Positions 52,369-63,804 of a DNA stretch of 64,000 nt are shown here, piece by piece. The DNA is taken from the NCBI RefSeq assembly GCF_006345805.1, contig NC_043001.1, forward strand, positions 27,218,001-27,282,000. The letters are read 5' to 3'. This stretch comes from Octopus sinensis. Taxonomy: Eukaryota. The notes beneath the pieces were generated by a model, which saw nothing but the letters and a program-made list of their open reading frames with translations, was not told where the DNA came from and ran no database searches. The position numbers were made by a program, and so were the translations under genes. Each line of letters opens with the position of its first letter. Positions within the stretch are counted from its first letter, which is position 1.

Positions 52369-52538
52369 ATATAGTTACAACTACAAAAGCTACCGTTACA
52401 ACTACAAAAGCTACAGTTACAACTACACAAGCTCCAGTTACAACAACTCTTTCCCTGGACTGTCCAGATAATGAAATGTATTGTGCAGCCACAAACCCTG
52501 ACTTTAAAAACCAGTCTCTCAGATACCCTTATTTTTAG
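52369..52538 (+). pseudogene. Truncated duplicate of the LDLa 4 first-half exon: acceptor intact, donor lost at 52496, reads through to TAG (…MYCAATN-PDFKNQSLRYPYF*)
   Basis: 52353-52496 matches 56015-56158 at 143/144 nt, then switches to inverted sequence. Confidence 0.9.
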
Positions 52539-52933
52539 TTGTAAAAAATTATTACCTTTGTACGGTATTTTTCCCATGCTGGCCACTTGATAATATCGAT
52601 ATTCAAATATTGATATTATCCTTATTTATGACTTTATATATATATATAAATCATCATCATCATCATGTCTGAATACACAAGCTATCAATCATTAGCAATA
52701 GAATGAAAATGTGAAACAATTCAAGCATACTTTATTAGTCATAATTACATATCATTAAAGCTTGACCAGAACTGGGAGAAAAGTTTTCTATCATTTGTAA
52801 GTTACCTTCCCAAATAATACATAATAATTGATTTTACAGTTACAGAATTGTGACAACCTTGTTATAATCATATTTATAAATTCAAATATAGCAACTTGCA
52901 TTGAATTAAAATCATTTCAATTATTATACATAC

Positions 52934-53004
52934 CACAATCTTTCTCATCTTCACCATCAGAACAGTCATTTTCTCCATCACATTTCCAACTCAGTGAAAT
53001 GCAG
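52934..53004 (-). pseudogene. Antisense LDLa second-half exon ([23 protein letters not shown]) inside the inverted insert
   Basis: On the minus strand: aacag acceptor, 71-nt open frame, gtatgt donor. Confidence 0.9.
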
Positions 53005-53335
53005 CTGTTATAATGAAATTTTGTTCATATAGAAATCAACTCAAGCAATACTTATGTGTGTATTTTAATTTATGGCTTTTGAGAAGAAAATATTTTTTGT
53101 CTAGGTGATGAAAGAAAATATTTATTCTAGTATGTGATCAAGAGCAAAATTCATTGCATGAGAAGCCAGACACACTTTCACATATAGGTAAGAGAAAGAT
53201 GTGTTCACCTTTCATAAAATTATAACCAGATTTGCTTTTCCTTCCCCTAGTTTATAACGTACTTTAGAAACATATTCATTGCTTATGAATATTAAGATGG
53301 TTAATAGGATGAGAAAGAAAAATGAGTTATCTTAC

Positions 53336-53444
53336 GTGTTTGTGTATGTACAATACATTTCATTAACTTGACAGTCCAGGGAAAGAGATGTTGTAACTGG
53401 AGCTTGTGTAGTTGTAACTAGAGCTCGTGTAGTTGTAACTATAT
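53336..53444 (-). pseudogene. Antisense Thr-rich LDLa first-half exon (IVTTTRALVTTTQAPVTTSLSLDCQVNEMYCTYTNT) inside the inverted insert
   Basis: On the minus strand: tttcag acceptor, 109-nt open frame, gtaaga donor; paralog of 62005-62113. Confidence 0.9.
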
Positions 53445-54306
53445 CTGAAATAGTAAAACAAATCTTTTAACTTTTTATCATTCACTTGCTTCAGTCATTT
53501 GATTAAATCCTTCAAGCAGTGACCCAGTCATGGTGGCATGATATTTGAAGGGCTTAGTCAAATAAATTGGCTCCGGTTCTTATTTTTAAGATCTCATACT
53601 ATTTCTATCAGTTGATTGTGCTGTGCCACTAAATTCCAGGGACATTAACAAACCAACACTGGTTATCAAATGTCAGTGGAGAGGGAATCACAAACACAAA
53701 TTCACATAAACACACATATTATAACGCAATGAGCTTCTACCCACCAAGCAAATCCACTCACAAGGCACTAGTTGGGTTAGGGCTATTGTGGAAGACACTT
53801 GCTCAATGTGTCCTGTAATGGGACTGAACCTAAACCATGTGATAGACATGAAATTGAAAAATGAAAAGAAAAATATTTGTAAACATCACAATATCATTGG
53901 CTTTTGAGAATTGATTGGTTACTTAAAAACTGATACTTATTTTTGCTTGTACTGTGTCAGGTTTCTTTCTTACTGTAAATTATTTCATTAATCAGGAATC
54001 AGTAATCAGCAACATGAAAGTGAGAGTTGCAATTGATCATCATTTTCATTTTAAAGTCCATTTTTTTCTCTTTTGCATGGATCAGACAAGATTCTTAGAG
54101 AGAGATTTTTCCATAGCTTAATGCCCTTCCTGTTGTTAACCCTCACCTTTTTCCAAGCAAGTTTTTAAACTCCTAGTTTGTTAAACAATGAACAGCCCAG
54201 ATATGATTTTGTGACTGACTGCAAGCATGAGACATCACCTGTGATGTTTGCAGTTGGTGAGGATGATGAGAGAAAGAAACTCACTGAGACAAACACATAC
54301 ATGCAA

Positions 54307-54342
<36 letters not shown>

Positions 54343-59920: not shown

Positions 59921-61112
59921 CTCAAACAATATCATTACTCAAAACTTGGTTGCAGCTGCCATGTATGTATGCATGTATGTATGTATGTATCTATGTCAGG
60001 TCACTTTCGAGTGCTACAGGTAATATGTAACCCAGTACAACCTGTTGCAGGGTTGTCAGTGACTAAACCGGCCACCCCACCAAGCTTGCTTGGTGAGGAG
60101 GGTGTTTATTGGACACCCTGTGGGATGAAAAACAAAACCCGTCAAAGAGTGGAGGAACTCTTGAGAGTCAACTGCCATCCAATAAATGTCTTAAGGATGT
60201 ATCATGCGCGGGGACATAGAAATAATGGGACTGAATACCTGATCACGCGGTTAAACCATTGGGAGTGAAGGACTCCTAGCCTTTGTTAGGGCATCCTTCC
60301 AGGAGAAGGTAACTCAGGTAACTAGGATAACTCCGACATAAAATCTGCGGCTCAGTGGTTACCGATGATGTTGACTTGTTCTTCTTTTCGGATTAAGGCT
60401 ACTGTTATTAAGTGAGTGGGATTGACTCAGTGCACAGCCTTTCCTCACTTTAGAAAATATCTTCTTGCACAGGCATTGCATGATAACAACATTGATTAAG
60501 CTTCGTGCAATGGCCATACTCGATAACGAGGGGGCAGCCACCATGTATGTATGTATGTATGTATGTATGCAAGCATGCGTATATGTATGTATGTACTAGA
60601 TATTGGACCCAGCATTGCTCATGTTTTCACGTTGAGGTTAAGTCACCTGTATTGTTAAGCCCACTTGTATTGAATAAGCATTTTCTAAGAGACTATTCTC
60701 TCGACTTTGTTGAAATCTTACATGTGAAAAAGTGCAAAAGCTGCAGAATAAATAGCATCATTATGGGAATTTTCGATAGAGCTCACAAAAATCGATGCCA
60801 ACTGATCATTATGGAATTTTCGAAAAATTCCGGCTTTATTTGAACTTGAGGACTTGTGATCTACCTATATACCAAATATCATTAAAATTAGTTGGACGGT
60901 GTGGGAGGAGTAACTGTAATCCCAAACAGACACAAACACACACACAAACACTGACACCATTATACATTTATGTATATAAATGGATGTGTCTAAATTTGTA
61001 TGTATGTATGCATGAGTACATGTGTGCATGCATAGATTATTGGTGTAACATTCGATGTATGGAAGCAGTACTCTAATGATGTGCAGTCATTGTATGTATG
61101 TATGCATATACT

Positions 61113-61143
<31 letters not shown>

Positions 61144-62004
61144 TTGCATGTATGTGTTTGTCTCAGTGAGTTTCTTTCTCTCATCATCCTCACCAACTGC
61201 AAACATCACAGGTGATGTCTCATGCTTGCAGTCAGTCACAAAATCATATCTGGGCTGTTCATTGTTTAACAAACTAGGAGTTTAAAAACTTGCTTGGAAA
61301 AAGGTGAGGGTTAACAACAGGAAAGGCATCAGGCTATGGAAAAATCTCTCTCAAAGAATCCTGTCTGATCCATGCAAAAAAGAAAAAAATGGACTTTAAA
61401 ATGAAAATGATGATCAATTGCAACTCTCACTTTCATGTTGCTGATTACTGATTCCTGATTAATGAAATAATTTACAGTAAGAAAGAAACCTGACACAGTA
61501 CAAGCAAAAATAAGTATCAGTTTTTAAGTAACCAATCAATTCTCAAAAGCCAATGATATTGTGATGTTTACAAATATTTTTCTTTTCATTTTTCAATTTC
61601 ATGTCTATCACATGGTTTAGGTTCAGTCCCATTACAGGACACATTGAGCAAGTGTCTTCCACAATAGCCCTAACCCAACTAGTGCCTTGTGAGTGGATTT
61701 GCTTGGTGGGTAGAAGCTCATTGCGTTATAATATGTGTGTTTATGTGAATTTGTGTTTGTGATTCCCTCTCCACTGACATTTGATAACCAGTGTTTGTTT
61801 GTTAATGTCCCTGGAATTTAGTGGCACAGCACAATCAACTGATAGAAATAGTATGAGATCTTAAAAATAAGAACCGGAGCCAATTTATTTGACTAAGCCC
61901 TTCAAATATCATGCCACCATGACTGGGTCACTGCTTGAAGGATTTAATCAAATGACTGAAGCAAGTAAATGATAAAAGTTAAAAGATTTGTTTTACTATT
62001 TCAG

Positions 62005-62113
62005 ATATAGTTACAACTACACGAGCTCCAGTTACAACTACACAAGCTCCAGTTACAACAACTCTTTCCCTGGACTGTTCAGATAATGAAATGTATTGTA
62101 CATCCACAAACAC
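62005..62113 (+). CDS. Thr-rich linker plus LDLa 6 first half (IVTTTRAPVTTTQAPVTTTLSLDCSDNEMYCTSTNT)
   Basis: tttcag acceptor; variant donor gtacga; 109 nt. Confidence 0.85.
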
Positions 62114-62445
62114 GTACGATAACTCTTTTTTTCTTTCTCATCCTATTAACCATCTTAATATTCATAAGCAATGAATATGTTTCTAAAGTACGTTATAAAC
62201 TAGGGGAAGAAAAAGCAAATCTGGTTATAATTTTATGAAAGGTGAACACATCTTTCTCTTACCTATATGTGAAAGTGTGTCTGGCTTCTCATGCAATGAA
62301 TTTTGCTCTTGATCACATACTAGAATAAATATTTTCTTTCATCACCTAGACAAAAAATATTTTCTTCTCAAAAGCCATAAATTAAAATACACACATAAGT
62401 ATTGCTTGAGTTGATTTCTATATGAACAAAATTTCATTATAACAG

Positions 62446-62516
62446 CTGCATTTTACTGAGTTGGAAATGTGATGGAGAAAATGACTGTCCAAATGGGGAA
62501 GATGAGAAAGATTGTG
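62446..62516 (+). CDS. LDLa 6, second half, identical to 56494-56564
   Basis: aacag/gtatgt sites; 71 nt. Confidence 0.9.
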
Positions 62517-63804
62517 GTATGTATAATAATTGAAATGATTTTAATTCATTATAAGTGGCTATATTTGAATTTATAAATATGATTATAACAAGGTTGTCAC
62601 AATTCTGTAACTGTAAAATCAATTATTATGTATTATTTGGGAAGGTAACTTACAAATGATAGAAAACTTTTCTCCCAGTTCTGGTCAAGCTTCAATGATA
62701 TGTAATTATGACTGATAAAGTATGCTTGAATTGTTTCACATTTTCATTCTATTGCTAATGATTGACAGCTTGTTTATTCAGACGTTTCTAAAGCATAAAT
62801 ATTTCATATTTTTCTTTTCTCCTTAAACACTTTATTTCAATGTCTTTCCTATATGTGATGTTTGCATAATACATAAAACCTTCTCTTCCTATCCTTCATT
62901 TCAAGCACATGGATTTCAGTAACAAAAATTTCCAGTTAGACTGGAAATCTCTTTTCCATAAGTGATATGCTTTAAATTGTTTTCCCATTTCATCTCAATA
63001 GTTTGCTGTAGATTGCTTAATAGTCTAAATGCGTGTCTGGGTGTGTGCATGTGAATCCATATCTATATATCTATTGTTCTGTCTTTTCCTGTTTTTTCTT
63101 TTTTATTTTTTTACTGTTTTGTTCTCACAGTTCTGTTCTTGTTACCACTTTCACCCTCCGCAAAAAATCCCAAATTTTATTTAAGTACTTGTAATAATGG
63201 GCAATCATTATCAAAAATGAGAAATTTACTTAAACAACAGGAATTTAATTCGGTGAAAGAAAAAGCAAGAAGACTCTCAGGCTGCAGAGACACAAAACAT
63301 AAACGCCACTTCATAGAAAGTTAAATATGGCCAATTTTATTTAAAATTACAAAAATAATCCTTGTAATTTTTCCTTTTTATGTCTACTGCAAGAAGCTGG
63401 CTTTGCACCCACATGGTTTCAGGTTCCATCTCACTACAGGGCATCTTGGGAAAGTGTCTTCCACTATAGCCCCAGCCCATCCATTGCCTTTGTGAGTGGA
63501 TTTCATTAATGGTTGGAAGCTAATTGTGTATAATATATATATGTGTGTTTATGTGTCTTTATGTTTGTCCCTCCATCAACATTTGACAATCGGTGTTGGT
63601 ATATCAAAGTCCCTGTAACTTAGTAGTACAACACAAGTAACTGATAGAATAAGTGAGGCTTTAAAAAAAAGAACTGAGGCCAATTTATTTCACTAAACTC
63701 ATCAAGCAGTGTCCCTACTTGACTGGGACACTACTTGACAGGTTTAGTCAAATGACTGAAACAAGTAAATGATAAAAGTTAAAAGATTTGTTTGACTATT
63801 TCAG

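What the first reader, a model, noticed from the sequence alone, without database searches (positions are those of the whole stretch)
52493..62785. Multi-kb inverted repeat loops out four exons totalling 360 nt in frame: predicted dsRNA, editing and circRNA hotspot
Seen: the antisense insert can pair with 59451-62785 of the same pre-mRNA, including both LDLa 6 exons. The loop holds exons of 130+71+85+74 = 360 nt, phase 1-1. Back-splicing 58742 to 56031 gives GAT with no stop and in-frame Met codons. Known: flanking inverted repeats promote back-splicing and exon skipping, and long dsRNA is hyper-edited by ADAR, which is very active in coleoids. Inference: possible circRNA with an endless LDLa ORF, in-frame skipping of LDLa 4-5, masking of LDLa 6, and recoding.
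Basis: partly seen in the sequence, partly recalled or inferred. Interest (0 to 1): 0.7.

Follow-up and report, generated by a model that had tools for sequence, protein, structure and literature searches.

The report
Inverted LDLa exon-cassette copy inside octopus gene
An octopus protease gene carries, inside one intron, a 3.5-kb backwards copy of its own downstream exons and intron; it could fold the pre-mRNA into a very long double strand, but whether that causes RNA editing, exon skipping or circular RNA is untested.

Summary
Window 52493-56017 is the reverse complement of 59451-62783 (98.6%, 46 substitutions, 4 indels). Its left end also matches 59017-59417 perfectly. The four exons (130+71+85+74 nt) have AG/GT sites, and the 360-nt circle has no stop codon.

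The window is Octopus sinensis. The exons are RefSeq coding exons (LDLa4 and LDLa5) of LOC115211767/LOC115211766, a mosaic SRCR-lectin-Kringle-LDLa-PAN-trypsin protease.

- The insert is one full 3541-nt period of the LDLa cassette array, circularly permuted and lacking 33 nt. Both ends lie in a small palindrome.
- It interrupts an upstream copy of the 130-nt exon. The junctions share only 4 and 3 nt, and a 144-nt duplication flanks the insert. This points to template switching or re-insertion of a DNA circle, not transposition.
- It also pairs with the LDLa4 exons inside the supposed loop, so three mutually exclusive duplexes compete.
- The branch-point region of the 56031 acceptor lies inside the arm.

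The dsRNA potential is real. Editing is plausible. CircRNA is possible but unsupported, because circRNAs are scarce in octopus. An endless translated LDLa ORF is very unlikely. Misassembly is not excluded (about 0.2).

The parts
51955..52086 (+). (GAA)n microsatellite that sits where an LDLa exon 2 should be. It is followed by the usual intron downstream of exon 2 (52087-52297). A relic of a degenerate upstream cassette.
   Evidence: Sequence read. 52064-52297 is 90.7% identical to 58723-58958.
52353..52496 (+). Left copy of the 144-nt flanking direct duplication. It holds an intact acceptor and the first 128 nt of the 130-nt exon (52369-52496), cut off by the insert. There is no donor. Read-through meets an in-frame stop at 52536-52538.
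   Evidence: 99.3% identical to 56015-56158. Junction alignment. No donor-like GT scoring at least 7/9 up to 52800, and the stop position.
52493..56017 (-). The inverted insert (INV). It is one array period in antisense orientation. Unambiguous insert 52497-56014, plus junction microhomologies AAAC (52493-52496) and TGT (56015-56017).
52934..53004 (-). Antisense copy of an LDLa exon 2 ([23 protein letters not shown]). The ORF and the splice sites are intact on the minus strand.
53336..53444 (-). Antisense copy of an LDLa exon 1 (…LDCQVNEMYCTYTNT). The ORF and the splice sites are intact on the minus strand.
   Evidence: The same CQVNEMYCTYTNT variant is a forward coding exon in O. vulgaris CAI9722758/59.
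56031..56160 (+). LDLa4 exon 1 (130 nt), an annotated coding exon. Its acceptor lies 13 nt after the end of the insert.
56494..56564 (+). LDLa4 exon 2 (71 nt).
56057..56831 (+). Nearest alternative pairing partner of the insert's left part (52667-53439). 775 nt at 96.6%. It contains most of LDLa4 exon 1 and all of exon 2.
   Evidence: Duplex energies of -191 and -143 kcal/mol against about -41 and -28 for shuffled sequence.
57852..57936 (+). LDLa5 exon 1 (85 nt).
58669..58742 (+). LDLa5 exon 2 (74 nt). This is the donor of the proposed back-splice.
59017..59417 (+). Second alternative partner: a 401-nt perfect complement of 52493-52893.
   Evidence: (I5).
59358..59480 (.). Small palindrome with 39-nt arms (82% complementary) and a 45-nt spacer, built from two partial copies of a low-copy element also seen at 21535-21714. 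Both ends of the copied segment (59417 and 59451) fall inside it. The 33 nt 59418-59450 are missing from the insert.
59451..62783 (+). Main downstream arm (3.3 kb). It comprises about 2.5 kb of intron and both LDLa6 exons with their intron and downstream flank.
62005..62113 (+). LDLa6 exon 1 (109 nt), inside the downstream arm.
62446..62516 (+). LDLa6 exon 2 (71 nt), inside the downstream arm.
62010..64000 (+). Second unit of a direct tandem duplication (period 5953 nt) of 56057-58047, 98.9% identical. It runs off the end of the window and contains LDLa6 and LDLa7 exon 1 (63804-63888).

Best explanation
The feature is a young, lineage-specific, non-coding inverted copy of one period of the tandem LDLa-cassette exon array. 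The period holds exon 1, exon 2, the downstream flank, a small palindromic element and about 2.5 kb of intron. The gene is Octopus sinensis LOC115211767/LOC115211766, a secreted-type mosaic serine protease (SRCR, C-type lectin, Kringle, LDLa repeats, PAN, SRCR, trypsin).

Origin (inferred). The copy was made from a tandem or circular template and inserted backwards into the first copy of the 130-nt exon. The likely route is replication template switching (FoSTeS/MMBIR) or microhomology-mediated re-integration of a one-period DNA circle opened at the palindrome. The event left 4-nt and 3-nt microhomologies and a 144-nt flanking duplication.

Present state (shown). The insert sits in the 5958-nt intron between LDLa3 (donor after 50072) and LDLa4 (acceptor at 56031).

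Expected behaviour (inferred). In the pre-mRNA the insert is a single 5' arm that can pair with one of three partners at a time. These are the LDLa4 exon region (775 bp, made first), 59017-59417 (401 bp, perfect) and 59451-62783 (3.3 kb, containing the LDLa6 exons). My ranking of consequences if the gene is expressed and the insert is real:
- ADAR hyper-editing of the arms: about 0.5.
- Some influence on which LDLa cassettes are included: about 0.3.
- A detectable 360-nt circRNA: about 0.15-0.2.
- Translation of an endless LDLa ORF: below 0.03.
For: Structure. See for the 98.6% identity over 3.3 kb and the 401 nt at 100%.

One-period circular permutation. The direct copies of the exon-2 downstream flank at 59017 and 62558 are 3541 nt apart. 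The insert runs from 59451 to 62783 and then, through that shared flank, continues from the equivalent of 59243 to 59417.

Junctions. The microhomologies are AAAC and TGT, and the 144-nt flanking duplication is 99.3% identical.

The insert is a distinct sequence, not a trivial duplicate. Its exons differ from LDLa6 at 11 of 180 sites (10 non-synonymous, 1 synonymous), against 34 of 3146 elsewhere (Fisher p = 1.7e-5). They encode variants seen as forward coding exons in relatives: CISLSW…[10 protein letters not shown] in O. bimaculoides and CQVNEMYCTYTNT in O. vulgaris.

Flipping does not help. Reversing the insert in place does not restore a canonical unit, because both junctions would still be non-homologous joins. 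A simple misorientation therefore cannot explain it.

Youth. In a tree, the insert groups with the two forward O. sinensis units at 100/99 support against all O. bimaculoides units. The readable part of the O. bimaculoides locus has only forward units and none of the 2.1-kb intron core.

Gene context. XP_036359159.1 maps at 100% to the window exons.

Cassette variability. Isoforms X1, X2 and X3 differ by whole LDLa cassettes.

Literature. Octopus editing is concentrated in intronic and 3'UTR hairpins (PMC9699675).
Against: No reads were available, so both junctions rest on a single assembly of a highly repetitive array. The region is visibly difficult. Two RefSeq genes share exons, and an unplaced scaffold matches 21 kb of the window at 99.4%.

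DNA for the O. vulgaris locus and for the rest of the O. sinensis gene could not be fetched, so presence in an independent assembly is untested.

No RNA data were available for editing, circRNA or small RNAs.

All annotated isoforms include LDLa4, although its exons can be buried in a 775-bp duplex. The pairing therefore may have little effect in vivo.

The exact source unit (exon pair followed directly by the flank, the palindrome and the intron core) is not present as such in the window.
Confidence: 0.6

Rival explanations
1. Assembly artefact. The inverted unit, or its junctions, comes from chimeric long reads or a tangled assembly graph in a near-identical tandem array. In the real genome this unit would be forward or elsewhere.
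For: The copies are 98.6-98.9% identical, which is in the range of haplotype divergence; an unplaced scaffold matches the window at 99.4% over 21 kb. Two RefSeq gene models share the same exons. The insert's exons and splice sites are fully intact, and a related exon variant is forward and coding in O. vulgaris.
Against: False joins normally arise inside long repeats, not at 3-4 nt of microhomology inside an exon. Two independent odd junctions bound exactly one period. Flipping the segment does not give a canonical array. The window contains no N gaps. The insert is not a copy of any forward unit in the window, since it has private coding variants.
Confidence: 0.2
2. The inverted repeat drives back-splicing from 58742 to 56031 to give a 360-nt circRNA with an endless LDLa ORF, together with in-frame skipping of LDLa4-5, masking of LDLa6 and ADAR recoding.
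For: The geometry and the stop-free circle are correct. The arms lie within 13 nt of the acceptor and 275 nt of the donor. An annotated isoform lacks LDLa6 (X3) and another lacks LDLa5 (X2).
Against: Competing pairings exist, including one with the LDLa4 exons themselves. The likely branch-point region of the 56031 acceptor lies in the arm. CircRNAs are few and of low abundance in octopus, which the authors attribute to ADAR antagonism (PMC9699675). No annotated isoform skips LDLa4 and LDLa5 together. A circular ORF would have no signal peptide for a disulfide-rich extracellular domain (inference).
Confidence: 0.15
3. Competing-pairing cassette selector. The insert acts as a shared docking arm whose mutually exclusive pairing with different downstream units decides which LDLa cassettes are spliced in, analogous to the Dscam1 docking and selector sites.
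For: One arm has three mutually exclusive partners in successive units. Annotated isoforms differ by whole cassettes.
Against: The insert is young and absent from the readable O. bimaculoides locus, so it is not conserved. The arms are kilobases long and carry neutral-looking divergence, unlike short selected selector sites. The isoform calls in near-identical repeats may themselves be mapping artefacts.
Confidence: 0.07
4. Transposon-mediated capture: a Helitron, Pack-type or other element carried host exons and inserted here.
For: The ends of the copied segment lie in a small palindromic repeat element that has another copy at 21535-21714.
Against: The insert has no terminal inverted repeats at its ends, no short target-site duplication (the duplication is 144 nt) and no 5'-TC…CTRR-3' ends. 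It has no transposase or Rep/helicase ORF, and its ORF fragments have no Pfam hit. The rest of the segment occurs only at this locus.
Confidence: 0.03

Closest known systems
Mouse Sry circular transcript flanked by long inverted repeats, and circRNAs driven by complementary intronic repeats such as inverted Alus (own knowledge: Capel 1993; Dubin 1995; Jeck 2013; Zhang 2014. Ivanov 2015 is cited in PMC9699675.)
   Same: Long reverse-complementary sequences lie upstream and downstream of internal exons that have canonical splice sites, in one transcription unit.
   Different: Here the downstream arm is not purely intronic, because it contains two coding exons. The upstream arm also pairs with exons inside the would-be circle, and it overlaps the likely branch-point region. 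No back-splice evidence exists.
ADAR hyper-editing of long intramolecular dsRNA formed by inverted repeats; in octopus, editing is concentrated in intronic and 3'UTR hairpins (PMC9699675)
   Same: A near-perfect duplex is possible, with perfect runs up to 487 bp within 3.3 kb, which is far beyond what promiscuous editing needs.
   Different: The arms are a gene's own exon cassette rather than dispersed transposon copies. Editing was not observed here.
Microhomology-mediated template-switch rearrangements (FoSTeS/MMBIR, DUP-TRP/INV-DUP type) and templated insertions (own knowledge: Lee 2007; Hastings 2009; Carvalho 2011)
   Same: An inverted copy of nearby cis sequence, 3-4 nt of microhomology at both junctions, a small flanking duplication, and breakpoints at a palindrome.
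   Different: The copied segment is almost exactly one repeat period, circularly permuted. This additionally suggests a circular (eccDNA-like) or tandem template. No read-level validation is available.
Hairpin-RNA (endo-siRNA) loci and proto-miRNA genes born from inverted duplication of gene fragments (own knowledge: Drosophila hpRNA loci; Allen 2004 in plants)
   Same: An inverted duplicate of coding exons yields a long hairpin that is complementary to the parent gene.
   Different: The hairpin lies inside the parent gene's own intron rather than at a separate locus. No small-RNA data were examined.
Dscam1-type competing RNA pairing for cassette choice (own knowledge)
   Same: One upstream arm is complementary to several downstream tandem units, and the pairings exclude each other.
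   Different: The arms are kilobases long, young and not conserved. The cassettes are not mutually exclusive in the annotated mRNAs.

Membership tests
Complementary-intron (inverted-repeat-flanked) circRNA locus | Reverse-complementary sequences on both sides of the circularised exons | tested here: met
   52493-56017 lies upstream. 59017-59417 and 59451-62783 lie downstream of exons 56031-58742.
Complementary-intron (inverted-repeat-flanked) circRNA locus | Canonical AG acceptor and GT donor at the back-splice sites | tested here: met
   TTTCAG|ATATAG at 56031 and ATTGTG|GTATGT after 58742.
Complementary-intron (inverted-repeat-flanked) circRNA locus | Pairing across the flanking introns is favoured over competing pairings | tested here: inconclusive
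   The same arm pairs over 775 bp (96.6%) with the LDLa4 exons inside the circle, and those are transcribed first. The 3.3-kb duplex is thermodynamically stronger. The kinetics are unknown.
Complementary-intron (inverted-repeat-flanked) circRNA locus | Back-splice junction reads or RNase R resistance | not testable with these tools
   No RNA reads were available. The gene is absent from the held supplements of the octopus circRNA survey.
ADAR hyper-edited dsRNA region | Long near-perfect intramolecular duplex within one transcript | tested here: met
   98.6% over 3.3 kb, with perfect runs up to 487 bp. Both arms lie within the annotated gene.
ADAR hyper-edited dsRNA region | Clusters of A-to-G mismatches in RNA relative to DNA | not testable with these tools
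   No transcript reads were available.
Microhomology-mediated template-switch or templated inverted insertion | Inverted copy of nearby cis sequence, with 2-5 nt of microhomology and no long homology at both junctions | tested here: met
   AAAC on the left and TGT on the right. The source lies 3.4 kb downstream.
Microhomology-mediated template-switch or templated inverted insertion | Junctions confirmed in independent reads or an independent assembly | not testable with these tools
   O. vulgaris and O. sinensis gene DNA was not retrievable because the gene ranges exceed 100 kb. Exact-ORF look-ups found nothing.
Transposable element carrying host exons | Terminal repeats or Helitron ends, a short target-site duplication, a coding capacity or other copies | tested here: not met
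   No TIRs at the ends, a 144-nt duplication, no TC…CTRR ends, no transposase ORF or Pfam hit, and the core is unique to this locus.
LDL-receptor class A domain (Pfam PF00057) | Profile match above the gathering score, with six cysteines and an acidic calcium-binding cluster | tested here: met
   77.8 bits against a cut-off of 24.1, two domains in the 120-aa peptide. The C-x6-C-x5-C-x6-C-x5-C-x8-C pattern is read directly.
Dscam-type competing-pairing exon selector | Docking and selector complementarity conserved across related species | tested here: not met
   No inverted unit in the readable part of the O. bimaculoides locus. The insert is a young O. sinensis-lineage copy.

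The most novel reading that the evidence does not exclude
The inverted cassette was generated from a one-period extrachromosomal DNA circle opened at a palindrome. It now serves as a shared docking arm whose mutually exclusive kilobase-scale pairings with successive units bias which hypervariable LDLa cassettes enter the mRNA. That would be an incipient Dscam-like selector caught at birth in an octopus protease gene whose LDLa loops are under diversifying selection.
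Probability: 0.07. Interest if true: 0.7.

Novelty: new member of a known kind. Interest (0 to 1): 0.33.

Why it matters
If the insert is real, the locus is a clean natural test case. It would show how a very long, near-perfect intragenic inverted repeat that contains coding exons is handled in an animal with exceptionally active ADAR. The possible outcomes are editing, circularisation, exon masking and small-RNA production.

The locus also documents a recent exon-cassette rearrangement with readable junctions. The array's LDLa loops change mostly by amino-acid replacements.

There is a practical point too. This region of the O. sinensis assembly and annotation needs care: two gene models share exons, the cassettes are near-identical, and an unplaced scaffold is a near-duplicate of part of the window. 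Otherwise this is one more intronic inverted repeat whose consequences are predicted from well-known rules.

Tried and rejected
- Exact look-up of eight ORFs from the region, three of them spanning a junction, in the 15-billion-protein collection. None was found, including the positive controls, so the result is uninformative.
- Fetching the O. vulgaris and O. sinensis loci through their proteins. P0008, P0027 and P0151 are not on record. P0256 and P0252 were found, but the gene ranges exceed 100 kb and no DNA was returned.
- A second homology search for transcript-derived fragments carrying a b-to-a (back-splice-like) junction. It returned only O. bimaculoides gene models.
- Rfam on 50-64 kb: no family reached its threshold.
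- Pfam on the ORF fragments of the 2.5-kb intron core: no hit.
- Literature. No paper mentions LOC115211766, LOC115211767 or their proteins. The held supplements of the octopus circRNA survey do not list the gene. A search for the O. sinensis assembly paper did not return it, so I make no statement about the sequencing technology.
- Simple in-place inversion. Rejected because the order of parts does not fit: the exon pair is intact on the minus strand and the intron core lies on the right, and flipping leaves both junctions non-canonical.
- A-to-G bias between the arms as a footprint of editing. Rejected: 30 of 46 differences are transitions of both kinds, which is an ordinary ratio.

Full report

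Yes. The repeat finder and a self-BLAST of the window show that 52667-56021 is the reverse complement of 59447-62783 (3366 columns, 97.7% with gaps). They also show that 52493-52893 is a perfect complement of 59017-59417.

A MAFFT alignment gives 3284 matches, 46 substitutions (30 transitions) and four indels. Three of the indels lie in microsatellites. Identity is 98.6%, and perfect runs reach 487 bp. Nothing else in the 64-kb window comes close; the next unrelated inverted match is 359 nt at 81%.

The four exons are exactly as described:
- 56031-56160 (130 nt)
- 56494-56564 (71 nt)
- 57852-57936 (85 nt)
- 58669-58742 (74 nt)

All four have AG acceptors and GTAAGA or GTATGT donors. Joining 58742 to 56031 gives GAT, and the 360-nt circle has no stop and two in-frame Met codons. 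The 120-aa product holds two LDLa domains (PF00057, E = 7e-22). Both LDLa6 exons (62005-62113 and 62446-62516) lie in the downstream arm.

**2. What gene is this?**

A profile-free search of 1.8 billion representatives found close relatives. A word-index search and cluster look-ups then named them.

XP_036359159.1 (LOC115211767, Octopus sinensis, 1445 aa) maps to the window exons at 100%. The window is therefore O. sinensis assembly GCA_006345805.1.

LOC115211766 isoforms X1, X2 and X3 use the same exons from the second Kringle onward.

The protein is a mosaic serine protease: SRCR, C-type lectin, Kringle, LDLa repeats, PAN, SRCR and trypsin. RefSeq names it "atrial natriuretic peptide-converting enzyme-like", and its neighbour "svh-1-like". 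These are automatic names.

The annotated array is a, b, a', b', last. The isoforms differ by whole cassettes:
- X1 has a, b, a', last.
- X2 has a, a', last, so LDLa5 is skipped.
- X3 has a, b, last, so LDLa6 is skipped.

None skips LDLa4 and LDLa5 together, and all keep LDLa4.

**3.

(a) *Tandem duplication.* 56057-58047 equals 62010-64000 at 98.9%, a tandem duplication with a 5953-nt period that runs off the window.

(b) *Flanking duplication.* The insert is flanked by a 144-nt direct duplication, 52353-52496 = 56015-56158 at 99.3%. The left copy has an intact acceptor and the first 128 nt of the 130-nt exon, then runs into the insert. It has no usable donor, and an in-frame stop follows at 52536-52538. 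It is therefore a decoy 3' splice site.

(c) *Relic upstream.* Upstream of that lies a (GAA)n run at 51955-52086, where an LDLa exon 2 should be.

(d) *Circular permutation.* Read on the minus strand, the insert is the intron core, then exon 1, exon 2, the downstream flank and a small repeat element.
- This corresponds to 59451→62783 joined, through the shared flank, to 59244→59417.
- The two direct copies of that flank (59017 and 62558) are 3541 nt apart.
- The insert is thus one period, circularly permuted, lacking only 59418-59450 (33 nt).
- Both ends fall inside a palindrome with 39-nt arms at 59358-59480.

(e) *Junctions.* They share only AAAC (left) and TGT (right) with the flanks.

**4. 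Real rearrangement or misassembly?**

For a real event:
- The joins are at microhomology inside an exon, not inside long repeats.
- Two odd junctions bound exactly one period.
- Flipping the segment does not restore a canonical unit.
- The window has no gaps.
- The insert is not a copy of any forward unit in the window.

On the last point, the insert's exons differ from LDLa6 at 11 of 180 sites (10 non-synonymous, 1 synonymous). Elsewhere it differs at 34 of 3146 sites (Fisher p = 1.7e-5). Its ORF and splice sites are intact on the minus strand. Its exon 2 encodes [23 protein letters not shown], identical to an O. bimaculoides unit. Its exon 1 carries CQVNEMYCTYTNT, which is a forward coding exon in O. 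vulgaris.

For an artefact:
- The copies differ by about 1%, similar to the 0.6% between the window and an unplaced O. sinensis scaffold over 21 kb.
- Two gene models share exons.
- I could not reach reads or the O. vulgaris DNA.

I put the artefact at about 0.2.

**5. Age and origin**

In a maximum-likelihood tree of the roughly 800-nt units, the insert and the two forward O. sinensis units form a clade (100/99) against all O. bimaculoides units. The insert branches first, with weak support of 80/76.

The readable half of the O. bimaculoides locus has three or four forward units. It has no inverted unit and none of the 2.1-kb intron core.

Non-exon divergence between the insert and its partner is about 1%. 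The event is therefore recent and specific to the O. sinensis/O. vulgaris lineage or to O. sinensis alone.

The combination of features fits replication template switching (FoSTeS/MMBIR) stalled at the palindrome. Those features are an inverted orientation, a cis source, microhomology, a 144-nt flanking duplication and breakpoints in a palindrome. It also fits microhomology-mediated re-insertion of a one-period DNA circle opened at the palindrome. The near-exact one-period length favours a circular or tandem template. This is inference.

Transposon capture is unlikely: there are no terminal repeats, no short target duplication, no Helitron ends and no transposase.

**6. What the RNA would do (inferred)**

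The insert lies in the annotated 5958-nt intron between LDLa3 and LDLa4, so it is transcribed with its partners. Three pairings are possible:
- A: 52667-56017 with 59451-62783 (3.3 kb). The loop is 56018-59450 and holds the four exons.
- B: 52493-52893 with 59017-59417 (401 bp, perfect).
- C: 52667-53439 with 56057-56831 (775 bp, 96.6%). This buries both LDLa4 exons and loops out no exon.

Any two of these would cross each other (a pseudoknot of long helices), so they are alternatives.

- C's partner is transcribed first.
- A is far more stable.
- Local duplex energies around the exons are -143 to -207 kcal/mol, against about -28 to -41 for shuffled partners.
- The arm ends 13 nt before the 56031 acceptor and includes …AACTAAAAAT…, the likely branch-point region. 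Pairing could therefore block the very acceptor that back-splicing needs.

Zolotarov et al. found only 296 high-confidence circRNAs in 18 O. vulgaris tissues, at low levels. They relate this to ADAR repressing circRNA biogenesis. They found most editing in intronic and 3'UTR hairpins (PMC9699675).

My ranking is therefore: hyper-editing of the arms is plausible, some effect on cassette choice is possible, a circRNA is possible but unsupported, and rolling translation is very unlikely. On the last point, the circle encodes no signal peptide for a disulfide-rich extracellular module.

**7. Comparison with known systems**

In mechanism the locus resembles circRNA loci flanked by inverted repeats (Sry, inverted Alus). 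It also resembles ADAR-edited long hairpins and hairpin-RNA loci born from inverted gene-fragment duplications. Its origin resembles microhomology-mediated template-switch rearrangements.

The tested defining features of these classes are met for the complementarity, the splice sites, the microhomology and the cis source. All RNA-level features, and the confirmation of the junctions in reads, remain untested.

A Dscam-like selector reading fails the conservation test.

**8. Verdict**

The feature is a new instance of a known kind. Interest is modest (0.33). The locus is a good test case, and the junction anatomy and the excess of amino-acid changes in the LDLa loops are of interest. The headline claims (circRNA, endless ORF, recoding) are unverified predictions, and an assembly error is not excluded.

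Noticed in passing
window 56031-56564, 62005-62516 and 52934-53444: Among the three near-identical LDLa 'a' units, exon differences are almost all non-synonymous (10:1 and 10:0), while the intron between the exons differs by only about 0.9%. The changes concentrate in the loops between Cys1 and Cys3 and in the CxxGEDE stretch. This suggests diversifying selection, or patchy conversion, on the LDLa cassettes.
   Followed up: partly
window 9648-30998 versus L002 1-21359 (O. sinensis unplaced scaffold VCDQ01000993.1, svh-1-like gene): 21.4 kb at 99.4% identity, then 95-97% up to window 50194. After about window 50688 the two sequences diverge. This is either a haplotig or a very recent segmental duplicate. 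Two RefSeq genes (LOC115211766 and LOC115211767) share the window's exons from the second Kringle onward.
   Followed up: partly
window 23154-27881 versus 31674-36973: A duplicated Kringle exon pair with its introns (75-88% identity). Both Kringles are in the annotated protein. An O. vulgaris model has three.
   Followed up: partly
window 21718-22086: A near-perfect 182-nt-arm palindrome (99%, 5-nt spacer), next to a copy (21535-21714) of the small element that forms the palindrome at 59358-59480.
   Followed up: partly
window 37207-38681 and 38679-40160: A 1.5-kb tandem duplication (98.1%) made largely of trinucleotide-type low-complexity sequence, which gives long poly-Asp, poly-Ile and poly-Ser frames.
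   Followed up: no
window 10567-12138, 14968-15765 and 45751-46346: Transposon remnants in introns: a long ORF resembling a reverse transcriptase with a C-terminal cysteine-rich part, and two mariner-like transposase fragments. These were judged by eye only.
   Followed up: no
window 56641-56692 (and the equivalent stretch in each copy of the exon-2 downstream flank): The O. vulgaris models contain an odd 17-residue segment, CHNSVTVKSIIMYYLGS. By eye it is the translation of a 52-nt stretch of this flank, bounded by AG and GT. This suggests a cryptic exon used where a unit lacks a normal exon 1, or an annotation artefact.
   Followed up: partly
window 50073-56030: The LDLa domain CPPGKMKC…CDGSPDCPDSSDEINC lies between LDLa3 and the T-linker LDLa in the svh-1-like proteins of O. 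vulgaris and, as a close variant, O. bimaculoides. It has no counterpart in the window.
   Followed up: partly
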